In this document: positions 56,570 through 56,851 of the stretch, one piece after another
Position numbering within the stretch: the first letter of the stretch is position 1
How the letters are laid out: the number at the start of each line of letters is the position of its first letter
Assembly: GCF_963853765.1 (NCBI RefSeq)
Contig: NC_088855.1
Coordinates: 7,316,001-7,380,000 of the forward strand
Direction: 5' to 3'
From: Magallana gigas
Lineage: Eukaryota
DNA length: 64,000 nt
Notes under the pieces: model-generated
Told to the model about the DNA's origin: nothing
Seen by the model: only the letters and a program-made list of their open reading frames with translations
Databases searched by the model: none
Made by a program: the position numbers and the translations under genes

Positions 56570-56851
56570 ATTTATACTTCGTGACATGTGTACAGTCGCC
56601 GGTGTGAAGCCATTTCGTATCTCTTTCCCACGGTTAGATTCCTTCACAAGCAACCAATCGACGTGCGCCCATTTCCCAATGCGACCGTGGCTTAAAAAGT
56701 ACGTCGCGTTCCATTGGTCAAAAAATTCCGTTGCATTCAATATGGCTGTGTCGGAATGTCAATCAATTTGTTTATCGTCTGAAATCAAAATAGGGGCACG
56801 TGCCACGATAATTACACTGCGAACCCGTAGTACTGTGGGAAAACTCCGCCT
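56570..56851 (-). promoter_or_regulatory. HES-C promoter: TATA, Su(H) paired site, CCAAT, GGCACGTGCC, distal CSL site
   Basis: TATAAAT at 56570-56576; paired site GTGTGAA (56602-56608), 16-bp spacer, TTCCCACG (56625-56632); CCAAT at 56654; GGCACGTGCC at 56795-56804; TGTGGGAA at 56834-56841. Confidence 0.85.

What the first reader, a model, noticed from the sequence alone, without database searches (positions are those of the whole stretch)
56601..56632. Canonical Su(H) paired site (SPS) in HES-C, with the partner half-site missing in HES-B
Seen, in gene orientation: CGTGGGAA-N16-TTCACACC, then 25 bp, then TATAAAT. Known: head-to-head CSL sites 15-17 bp apart recruit dimeric Notch transcription complexes. 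The vertebrate Hes1 promoter has the same high-affinity plus TTCACAC pairing just upstream of its TATA box, and fly E(spl) genes also carry SPSs. At the homologous position HES-B keeps the strong site, but the partner position (40996-41002) reads CTCTGGC. Inference: the two paralogs differ in Notch dose threshold (dimer versus monomer response).
Basis: partly seen in the sequence, partly recalled or inferred. Interest (0 to 1): 0.72.

Follow-up and report, generated by a model that had tools for sequence, protein, structure and literature searches.

The report
Conserved Notch paired site, oyster HES promoter
One of three tandem oyster HES repressor genes carries, just upstream of its TATA box, the same two-part Notch-response element as vertebrate Hes1/HES4, kept base for base across molluscs, while the neighbouring paralog has lost the second half; it is a well-known kind of element found in a new phylum.

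Summary
On the minus strand the window reads CGTGGGAA (56632-56625), a 16-nt spacer, TTCACACC (56608-56601), 24 nt, then TATAAAT (56576-56570). This lies upstream of a spliced, expressed bHLH-Orange-WRPW gene, HES-C.

HES-B aligns to it without indels. It keeps CGTGGGAA (41026-41019), but the partner position reads GCCAGAG.

The window is oyster, most likely Magallana/Crassostrea gigas.

Chance is excluded by conservation:
- The same pair, with an exact 16-nt gap, is present in four other oyster orthologs, in Pinctada, in Pecten and in the gastropod Gigantopelta.
- It is also present in a lizard HES4 promoter.
- In every case an inverted CCAAT box (GATTGG) lies upstream and a TATA box 20-34 nt downstream.
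- Spacer and flanks diverge while both half-sites and the gap length stay fixed.

Of nine Orange-domain genes in the genome, only HES-C has the pair. The oyster genome encodes CSL and a Notch whose ANK dimer-interface residues are K, D and R, against human K1946, E1950 and R1985.

Best reading: a Hes1-type Su(H) paired site that recruits two Notch complexes cooperatively, ancestral to both paralogs, with the partner half decayed in HES-B. The proposed dimer-versus-monomer dose difference is plausible but untested. It is a new member of a known kind and of moderate interest.

The parts
56625..56632 (-). High-affinity CSL/Su(H) site CGTGGGAA, the distal half of the paired site in the HES-C promoter
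   Evidence: Invariant in all 8 mollusc promoters compared.
56609..56624 (-). 16-nt spacer AGAGATACGAAATGGC
   Evidence: The length is exactly 16 in oysters, Pinctada, Pecten, Gigantopelta and Podarcis HES4, while the sequence drifts (75%, 75% and 47% identity to Pinctada, Pecten and Gigantopelta).
56601..56608 (-). Partner half-site TTCACACC (plus strand GGTGTGAA), the weaker Hes1-type CSL site
   Evidence: TTCACA is invariant in all molluscs compared and in Podarcis HES4 (TTCACACG).
56570..56576 (-). TATA box TATAAAT of HES-C
   Evidence: Raw RNA-read depth falls about ten-fold upstream of ~56554. The TATA box is conserved at 24-25 nt from the partner site in bivalves.
56654..56659 (-). Inverted CCAAT box GATTGG, 21 nt upstream of the strong site
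   Evidence: The 21-nt distance is the same in all HES-C-type mollusc promoters; it is 22 nt in HES-B and 10 nt in Podarcis HES4.
56579..56634 (-). 56-bp block invariant among five oyster orthologs, covering the whole paired site and the stretch down to the TATA box
   Evidence: It ties for the longest invariant run in the 642-column promoter alignment.
56834..56851 (+). Middle CSL block TGTGGGAAAACTCCGCCT, about 200 bp upstream and in the opposite orientation
   Evidence: Conserved in HES-B, Pinctada, Pecten and Gigantopelta, and as GGGGCGGRGTTTTCCCACA in Lingula and Owenia HES genes.
57406..57430 (+). Distal CSL pair in direct orientation (CGTGGGAA ... GTGAGAA), about 780 bp upstream
   Evidence: The GGYATTTTCCCACG core is conserved in HES-B (41394-41401), Pinctada, Pecten and Gigantopelta.
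56795..56804 (.). Palindromic GGCACGTGCC (a CACGTG box); a candidate HES autoregulatory site by inference only
   Evidence: GGCACGTG is invariant in HES-B, HES-C and Pinctada.
55174..56553 (-). HES-C transcription unit. Exons are ~56553-56415, 56290-56195 and 56035-55174. The CDS runs from 56474 to 55370 and encodes 273 aa with a bHLH domain (proline in the basic region), an Orange domain and C-terminal WRPW.
   Evidence: Both introns are confirmed by spliced RNA contigs and reads. Orange domain PF07527 scores 56.9 bits.
41019..41026 (-). HES-B strong CSL site CGTGGGAA at the homologous position
40995..41002 (-). HES-B partner position, reading GCCAGAGA (3 of 7 matches to TTCACAC); no CSL-like site at a spacing of 15, 16 or 17
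   Evidence: The HES-B ortholog L011 reads ACCACAGA here.
40964..40970 (-). HES-B TATA box TATAAAA, 24 nt from the partner position as in HES-C
41042..41047 (-). CAGGTG E-box 15 nt upstream of the HES-B strong site, absent at this position in HES-C
   Evidence: Conserved in the HES-B ortholog L011.

Best explanation
The 32-bp element is a functional Hes1-type Su(H) paired site (SPS), the proximal Notch-response element of an oyster Hairy/E(spl) gene.

Proposed mechanism:
- After Notch cleavage, a CSL-NICD-Mastermind complex loads on the high-affinity site CGTGGGAA.
- ANK-ANK contacts between two NICDs then recruit a second complex to the weaker, oppositely oriented site GGTGTGAA, 16 bp away.
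- This gives cooperative activation of a TATA promoter about 25 bp downstream, helped by a phased CCAAT box.
- Without NICD, the same sites would hold CSL-corepressor complexes.

Evolution: the module predates the HES-B/HES-C duplication. HES-C kept it intact, whereas in HES-B the partner half decayed, leaving a single proximal CSL site plus an E-box.

Shown here: the sequence, register, conservation, gene structure and expression, and the presence of CSL and Notch with a conserved dimer interface.

Inferred: CSL occupancy, cooperativity, Notch responsiveness, and any difference in response between HES-B and HES-C.
For: 1. All sequence criteria of an SPS are met: head-to-head orientation, a 16-nt gap, and one consensus site. 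The criteria come from PMC7685452 and PMC8494340.
2. The partner heptamer and the layout equal those of a vertebrate HES4 promoter fetched here. Podarcis L017 reads GATTGG-N10-TGTGGGAA-N16-TTCACACG-N20-TATAAAG. The vertebrate Hes1 SPS is one canonical site plus a slightly non-consensus site 16 nt away in reverse orientation, and it is dimer-dependent when isolated (PMC7685452).
3. Deep conservation. GATTGG-N21-CGTGGGAA-N16-TTCACA-TATA is found in four other oysters, Pinctada, Pecten and Gigantopelta. The half-sites are 100% and 87.5-100% identical, against 47-75% for the spacer and about 55% for the flanks, with the gap length fixed.
4. Among five oysters, the SPS-to-TATA stretch is a 56-bp invariant block while the 5'UTR is 74-82% identical.
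5. The trans factors are present. There is one CSL locus. The Notch ANK exons read AAKVLLD and ILLRNR, which corresponds to K, D and R at the human K1946/E1950/R1985 interface (PMC7561103).
6. The gene is expressed and spliced, and its main 5' end lies near the TATA box.
7. SPS-bearing genes fall on both sides of the HES-B/HES-C split in the protein tree. This favours loss of the partner in HES-B.
Against: - No binding, reporter or Notch-perturbation data exist for this promoter.
- Genome-wide, the motif occurs no more often than its reversed control.
- Pinctada has TTCACAG, which is two mismatches from the 7-mer consensus, so the partner can weaken without being lost.
- RNA contigs run through the element to 56746 and 56857. 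A minor longer transcript therefore includes it, and part of the constraint could in principle be transcript-level.
- The human interface residues were matched to the oyster sequence from my memory of the human sequence. The PDB search confirmed homology to the NOTCH1 ANK domain (2f8x/3nbn), but its printed alignments were swamped by designed ankyrins.
- The protein tree is rooted on a very long branch and was made by a quick method.
Confidence: 0.72

Rival explanations
1. Both half-sites bind CSL and mediate Notch input, but independently and additively, without ANK-mediated cooperativity. Under this view HES-B and HES-C differ only in the number of sites.
For: The isolated Hes5 'SPS' behaves as a monomer site in cells (PMC7685452). 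Some NICD paralogs are dimer-independent on Hes1. The E1950 position is D in the oyster.
Against: The 16-nt gap is exactly conserved across molluscs and a vertebrate while the spacer sequence drifts. That is hard to explain without a phasing constraint. The interface K and R are conserved, and D for E is a conservative change.
Confidence: 0.13
2. HES-B is also dimer-responsive, through a cryptic partner or through one of its other CSL sites. The sequence difference would then have no consequence for dose threshold.
For: Loading on a strong site can recruit a second complex to sites that do not resemble the consensus (PMC7685452). HES-B keeps the strong site, the same register to the TATA box, and the middle and distal CSL blocks.
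Against: The HES-B partner position matches TTCACAC at only 3 of 7 bases. It also changes between two oyster species (GCCAGAG against ACCACAG), whereas the HES-C partner is invariant.
Confidence: 0.3
3. The conserved TTCACAC(C) is the site of another factor. For example, plus-strand GGTGTGAA resembles a T-box half-site. Its fixed distance from the CSL site would then reflect a CSL-plus-other-factor composite element rather than a Notch dimer.
For: GGTGTGA is the T-box core (from my own knowledge). The oyster and Pecten sequences carry it.
Against: The base that completes the T-box core varies between lineages: TTCACAG in Pinctada, TTCACACA in Gigantopelta and TTCACACG in Podarcis. The CSL-like TTCACA is what stays invariant. 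The same heptamer in vertebrate Hes1 is an established RBPJ site.
Confidence: 0.07
4. The pair is a chance juxtaposition of a real CSL site with a CSL-like heptamer.
For: The genome-wide count equals the reversed-pattern control.
Against: Only 0.01 matches are expected per window. The pair is present at the same register in every orthologous promoter from oysters to a gastropod, and in a vertebrate HES4.
Confidence: 0.01

Closest known systems
Vertebrate Hes1/HES4 proximal-promoter SPS (one canonical RBPJ site plus the TTCACAC partner 16 nt away, just upstream of the TATA box)
   Same: The orientation relative to the gene is the same (strong site distal, weak site proximal). So are the 16-nt gap, the partner heptamer TTCACAC, the GATTGG box upstream and the TATA box 20-25 nt downstream. 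This was compared directly with Podarcis HES4 (L017), and it matches the description of Hes1 in PMC7685452.
   Different: The strong site is CGTGGGAA rather than TGTGGGAA. GATTGG lies 21 nt from the strong site rather than 10 nt. The spacer sequence is unrelated. The host is a mollusc, and no functional data exist.
Drosophila E(spl)-complex Su(H) paired sites (Bailey and Posakony 1995; Nellesen et al. 1999, both cited in PMC7561103)
   Same: These are head-to-head CSL pairs 15-17 bp apart upstream of bHLH-Orange-WRPW repressor genes that sit in tandem clusters. Paralogs in those clusters differ in site architecture.
   Different: From memory, fly SPSs usually pair two consensus-like sites and combine with proneural E-boxes (SPS+A). 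Here the paired-site gene lacks the E-box and the single-site paralog HES-B has it. Hairless, the fly corepressor whose action separates SPS from monomer sites (PMC8494340), is arthropod-specific to my knowledge.
Conserved SPS motif combinations upstream of deuterostome Hes genes and arthropod Notch targets (Rebeiz et al. 2012, Dev Biol 362:282)
   Same: As I recall the abstract, it reports very long-term conservation of an SPS within a fixed multi-motif arrangement upstream of Hes genes.
   Different: The paper is not held in the library, so I could not check which motifs or taxa it covers. As I recall, it treats deuterostomes and arthropods, not molluscs. My literature searches found no report of an SPS in a lophotrochozoan Hes promoter.
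Mammalian Hes5 'cryptic' SPS
   Same: It has one strong site with a non-consensus partner position 16 nt away, which is the situation of HES-B.
   Different: The Hes5 partner is conserved enough to have been proposed as functional. The HES-B partner position varies between congeners.

Membership tests
Su(H) paired site / sequence-paired site (SPS) | Two CSL-type sites in head-to-head orientation | tested here: met
   CGTGGGAA is on the gene strand and GGTGTGAA on the opposite strand, pointing towards each other.
Su(H) paired site / sequence-paired site (SPS) | Gap of 15-17 nt, with an optimum of 16 | tested here: met
   The gap is exactly 16 nt and is 16 in all orthologs examined.
Su(H) paired site / sequence-paired site (SPS) | At least one high-affinity consensus site (YGTGRGAA) | tested here: met
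   CGTGGGAA at 56632-56625.
Su(H) paired site / sequence-paired site (SPS) | A partner site able to bind CSL | tested here: inconclusive
   The heptamer is the same as the vertebrate HES4/Hes1 partner. That partner is reported to show only a minor loss of RBPJ affinity. Affinity for oyster CSL was not measured.
Su(H) paired site / sequence-paired site (SPS) | Both halves and their spacing under purifying selection | tested here: met
Su(H) paired site / sequence-paired site (SPS) | Cooperative binding of two CSL-NICD-Mam complexes that depends on the ANK interface (human K1946, E1950, R1985) | not testable with these tools
   Only the prerequisites were checked. A CSL gene is present. Oyster Notch ANK has K, D and R at the interface positions, aligned by eye from memory of the human sequence.
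Su(H) paired site / sequence-paired site (SPS) | The linked gene responds to Notch signalling | not testable with these tools
   The gene is expressed. No Notch-perturbation data were available.
Hairy/E(spl) (HES) bHLH-Orange repressors (the gene downstream) | bHLH domain with a proline in the basic region, an Orange domain, and a C-terminal WRPW | tested here: met
   [14 protein letters not shown] and a terminal WRPW. Orange domain PF07527 scores 56.9 bits. Homologs carry PF00010 and PF07527.

The most novel reading that the evidence does not exclude
The whole proximal module (inverted CCAAT box, strong CSL site, 16-nt gap, TTCACAC partner, TATA box, in that order and orientation) is one homologous cis-regulatory element inherited from the last common ancestor of molluscs and vertebrates. 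It would have been kept at base-pair register for more than half a billion years. The oyster HES-B/HES-C pair would then capture its natural conversion into a single-site-plus-E-box promoter after duplication, a ready-made test of what Notch dimer sites are for.
Probability: 0.5. Interest if true: 0.65.

Novelty: new member of a known kind. Interest (0 to 1): 0.5.

Why it matters
Base-pair-level conservation of a promoter element between phyla is rare. Here the Notch-to-Hes link appears to be kept not just as a regulatory connection but as the same physical arrangement in molluscs and vertebrates.

The library searches found no report of a paired site in a lophotrochozoan Hes promoter, and Notch cis-regulation in molluscs is essentially unstudied.

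The two neighbouring paralogs share every other promoter block and differ in the partner half-site. That offers a natural experiment on the still-debated role of cooperative Notch dimer sites. It also gives oyster developmental and immune studies a sequence-based candidate Notch reporter (HES-C).

Tried and rejected
- Chance was rejected on conservation grounds.
- Consensus-consensus pairs (YGTGRGAA-N15-17-TTCYCACR) occur genome-wide at control level: 4 places against 3. Three of those are copies of one repeat and none is at a HES gene.
- I scanned the promoters of the other Orange-domain genes: two HES genes at C3:6.81 and 6.84 Mb, a Hey-like gene on C5, and HES-A. None has the pair, and HES-A has no consensus CSL site in 5 kb upstream.
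- Three regions gave nothing useful. The two C3:43.69 Mb genes and the C7 gene showed no bHLH exon or CSL site in the stretches fetched, and the C7 fetch was cut at 10 kb, short of the gene.
- The Lingula and Owenia HES paralogs that I fetched lack the pair. They belong to other HES subfamilies, so this says little.
- A metagenome scan for further HES-B-type promoters returned only an unrelated GC-rich bacterial contig.
- Pfam NODP found no Notch exon. Pfam NOD did.
- The PDB searches with the Notch ANK exons matched NOTCH1 ANK entries, but the printed alignments were all designed ankyrins. The interface residues were therefore read from the exon translations.
- Rebeiz et al. 2012 and Arnett et al. 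2010 are not held in the library.
- The earlier-findings look-ups returned nothing.

Full report
**What is there**

The window holds three minus-strand Hairy/E(spl)-type genes:
- HES-A: WRPW stop at 7314, bHLH exon at 10427-10444.
- HES-B: stop at 39339, bHLH exon at 40678-40695.
- HES-C: stop at 55370, bHLH exon at 56267-56284.

Protein search places the window in an oyster. Two entries named Crassostrea/Magallana gigas are 100% identical over the parts they cover.

HES-C splices into a 273-aa protein with a proline-containing basic region, an Orange domain and a terminal WRPW (Orange domain 56.9 bits). RNA contigs and raw poly-A reads confirm both introns, 56036-56194 and 56291-56414. They show strand-specific expression. 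Depth falls about ten-fold upstream of ~56554, which is about 20-30 nt downstream of the TATA box. Two RNA contigs continue to 56746 and 56857, so a minor longer transcript exists.

**The observation**

In gene orientation the sequence reads CGTGGGAA (56632-56625), 16 nt, TTCACACC (56608-56601), 24 nt, TATAAAT (56576-56570). HES-B has CGTGGGAA at 41026-41019, and its partner position reads GCCAGAG (plus strand CTCTGGC at 40996-41002).

The two promoters align block by block with no indel between the strong site and the TATA box.

The relaxed pattern YGTGRGAA-N16-TTCNCAC is expected 0.01 times per window. Genome-wide (564 Mb), the Hes1-type pattern occurs twice, the same as its reversed control. 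The motif is thus not enriched as such. What matters is where it sits and that it is conserved.

**Conservation**

I fetched orthologous genomic contigs through the protein hits:
- Four other oysters, whose last-exon proteins are 96, 87, 78 and 79% identical: L003, L001/L002, L004, L006-L009.
- Pinctada imbricata (L010).
- Pecten maximus (L012).
- The gastropod Gigantopelta aegis (L015).
- The lizard Podarcis HES4 (L017).

Anchored on the strong site, all the mollusc genes read GATTGG-N21-CGTGGGAA-N16-TTCACA(C/G)-TATAAA. The TATA box is 24-25 nt from the partner in bivalves and 34 nt in the gastropod. Podarcis HES4 reads GATTGG-N10-TGTGGGAA-N16-TTCACACG-N20-TATAAAG.

Identity to the window, segment by segment:

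| Segment | Identity to Pinctada, Pecten, Gigantopelta |
|---|---|
| Strong site | 100% |
| Partner | 87.5-100% |
| Spacer | 75%, 75%, 47% |
| Flanking promoter | about 55% |

Among the five oysters, the stretch from the strong site to the TATA box lies in a 56-bp invariant block (56579-56634). That ties for the longest such block in the promoter. The other 56-bp block surrounds the middle CSL site. A gap length fixed at 16 while the spacer letters drift is the signature expected of a phased protein-protein contact.

**The paralog**

HES-B shares the following with HES-C:
- GATTGG, the strong site, and the block between the partner and the TATA box.
- The TATA box itself.
- The middle CSL block AGGCGGAGTTTTCCCACA (41222-41239).
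- The CACGTG box.
- The TTGATTGACAT block, the CCAAT box, and a distal GGCATTTTCCCACG site (41394-41401).

Only the partner differs. The HES-B ortholog from another oyster (L011, 81% protein identity) also lacks a CSL-like partner and reads ACCACAG. That is two changes from GCCAGAG, whereas the HES-C partner is invariant over the same species pair.

HES-B also has a CAGGTG E-box 15 nt upstream of the strong site, conserved in L011 and absent at this position in HES-C.

In a quick maximum-likelihood tree of 28 HES proteins, genes with the pair lie on both sides of the B/C split. HES-C groups with Pinctada and Pecten. HES-B falls in a supported set that also holds Gigantopelta and the vertebrate HES1/HES4 genes. 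Together with the evident promoter homology, this favours an ancestral pair with later decay in HES-B. The tree's root and resolution are weak.

**The rest of the genome**

Nine Orange-domain genes are detectable, and only HES-C has the pair. Consensus-consensus pairs occur at control frequency and not at HES genes.

The trans factors exist. There is one CSL locus on C5 and one Notch gene on C2. The Notch ANK exons read ...AAKVLLDAG... and ILLRNRS.... They match the NOTCH1 ANK domain of the dimeric-complex entries 2f8x/3nbn.

The human dimer interface is K1946, E1950 and R1985 (PMC7561103). Aligning by eye with the human sequence as I remember it, the oyster has K, D and R at those positions.

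**Mechanism**

The element meets every sequence-level criterion of an SPS as stated in PMC7685452 and PMC8494340. It copies the vertebrate Hes1-type arrangement, whose isolated SPS is dimer-dependent.

I therefore commit to cooperative loading of two CSL-NICD-Mastermind complexes on HES-C as the most likely mechanism (about 0.7). The neighbouring TATA and CCAAT boxes would act as the basal partners.

The claim that HES-B responds as a monomer, with a different dose threshold, is a fair hypothesis (about 0.5). Its caveats are cryptic partner sites, the other CSL sites that HES-B retains, and its extra E-box.

Lower-ranked rivals are independent non-cooperative CSL binding, a different factor on GGTGTGAA (it resembles a T-box half-site, but the base that would complete that site is not conserved), and chance.

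**Novelty**

SPSs upstream of Hes and E(spl) genes are textbook in flies and mammals. Their long-term conservation has been described for deuterostomes and arthropods (Rebeiz et al. 2012, recalled from memory because the paper is not held).

My library searches found no description of one in a mollusc or other lophotrochozoan. This is therefore a new member of a known kind. Two features add moderate interest: near-identical architecture in molluscs and a vertebrate, and a neighbouring paralog that has lost only the partner half.

Noticed in passing
window 56834-56851 and 41222-41239; L016 ~5655-5675; L043 ~4550-4576; L033 ~6975-6995; L034 (reverse strand) ~6735-6752: An extended reverse-oriented CSL block, GGCGGRGTTTTCCCACA, lies about 200 bp upstream of the core promoter. 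It is conserved in HES genes of oysters (several paralogs), Pinctada, Pecten, Gigantopelta, the brachiopod Lingula and the annelid Owenia. It is therefore more widespread than the paired site itself. The GC-box-like flank suggests a composite site.
   Followed up: partly
whole window: Consensus CSL sites (YGTGRGAA) are enriched across the HES cluster: 22 found against 7.75 expected, with no shuffle reaching 22. Two CGTGAGAA sites 61 bp apart at 42366-42434, about 1.4 kb upstream of HES-B, are conserved in the ortholog L011 (3852 and 3913).
   Followed up: partly
window 57406-57430; 41394-41401: A distal CSL module has the conserved core GGYATTTTCCCACG. In HES-C and Pecten it carries a second CSL site as a direct repeat 10 nt away. 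Its distance from the promoter varies from about 370 bp (HES-B, Pecten, Gigantopelta) to 780-1250 bp (HES-C, Pinctada), which implies insertions.
   Followed up: partly
window 56753-56766, 56795-56804, 56950-56976: Other deeply conserved promoter blocks are shared by HES-B, HES-C and Pinctada. They are TTGATTGACATTCC (PBX/MEIS-like plus CATTCC; Lingula has TGATTGACAG), the palindrome GGCACGTGCC (a possible HES autoregulatory box), and GACATTCCTATAC.
   Followed up: no
window 56579-56600: The block GACTGTACACATGTCACG lies between the partner site and the TATA box. It is conserved in HES-B, Pinctada and partly in Pecten, and contains a CACATG E-box-like core. The factor that binds it is unknown.
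   Followed up: no
window 56554-56857: RNA contigs from two runs continue upstream of the TATA box, through the paired site, to 56746 (followed by adapter sequence) and to 56857. Strand-specific raw reads cover this stretch at about 5-20% of exon-1 depth. This points to a minor upstream start site or read-through transcript.
   Followed up: partly
window 10445-16000 (HES-A upstream): HES-A is a divergent WRPW gene with KPMIERRRRERIN in its basic region. It has no consensus CSL site in about 5 kb upstream, and its only nearby site (10194) is intronic. It may not be a direct Notch target.
   Followed up: partly
window 55472 and 55356-55925: About half the reads of one RNA run carry an in-frame 3-nt insertion (GAC) after 55472 in the HES-C coding exon, together with several linked SNPs. 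This looks like an allelic variant of the C-terminal region.
   Followed up: no
L035 ~7545 (G000:C5:8.085 Mb): A Hey-like bHLH-Orange gene has a single CGTGGGAA about 110 bp upstream of its start codon. There are CACGTG boxes in its first intron.
   Followed up: no
L019 (G000:C5:38031781-38031811): This is the only other genome match to YGTGRGAA-N16-TTCACAC (TGTGAGAA ... TTCACAC). Its context was not examined.
   Followed up: no
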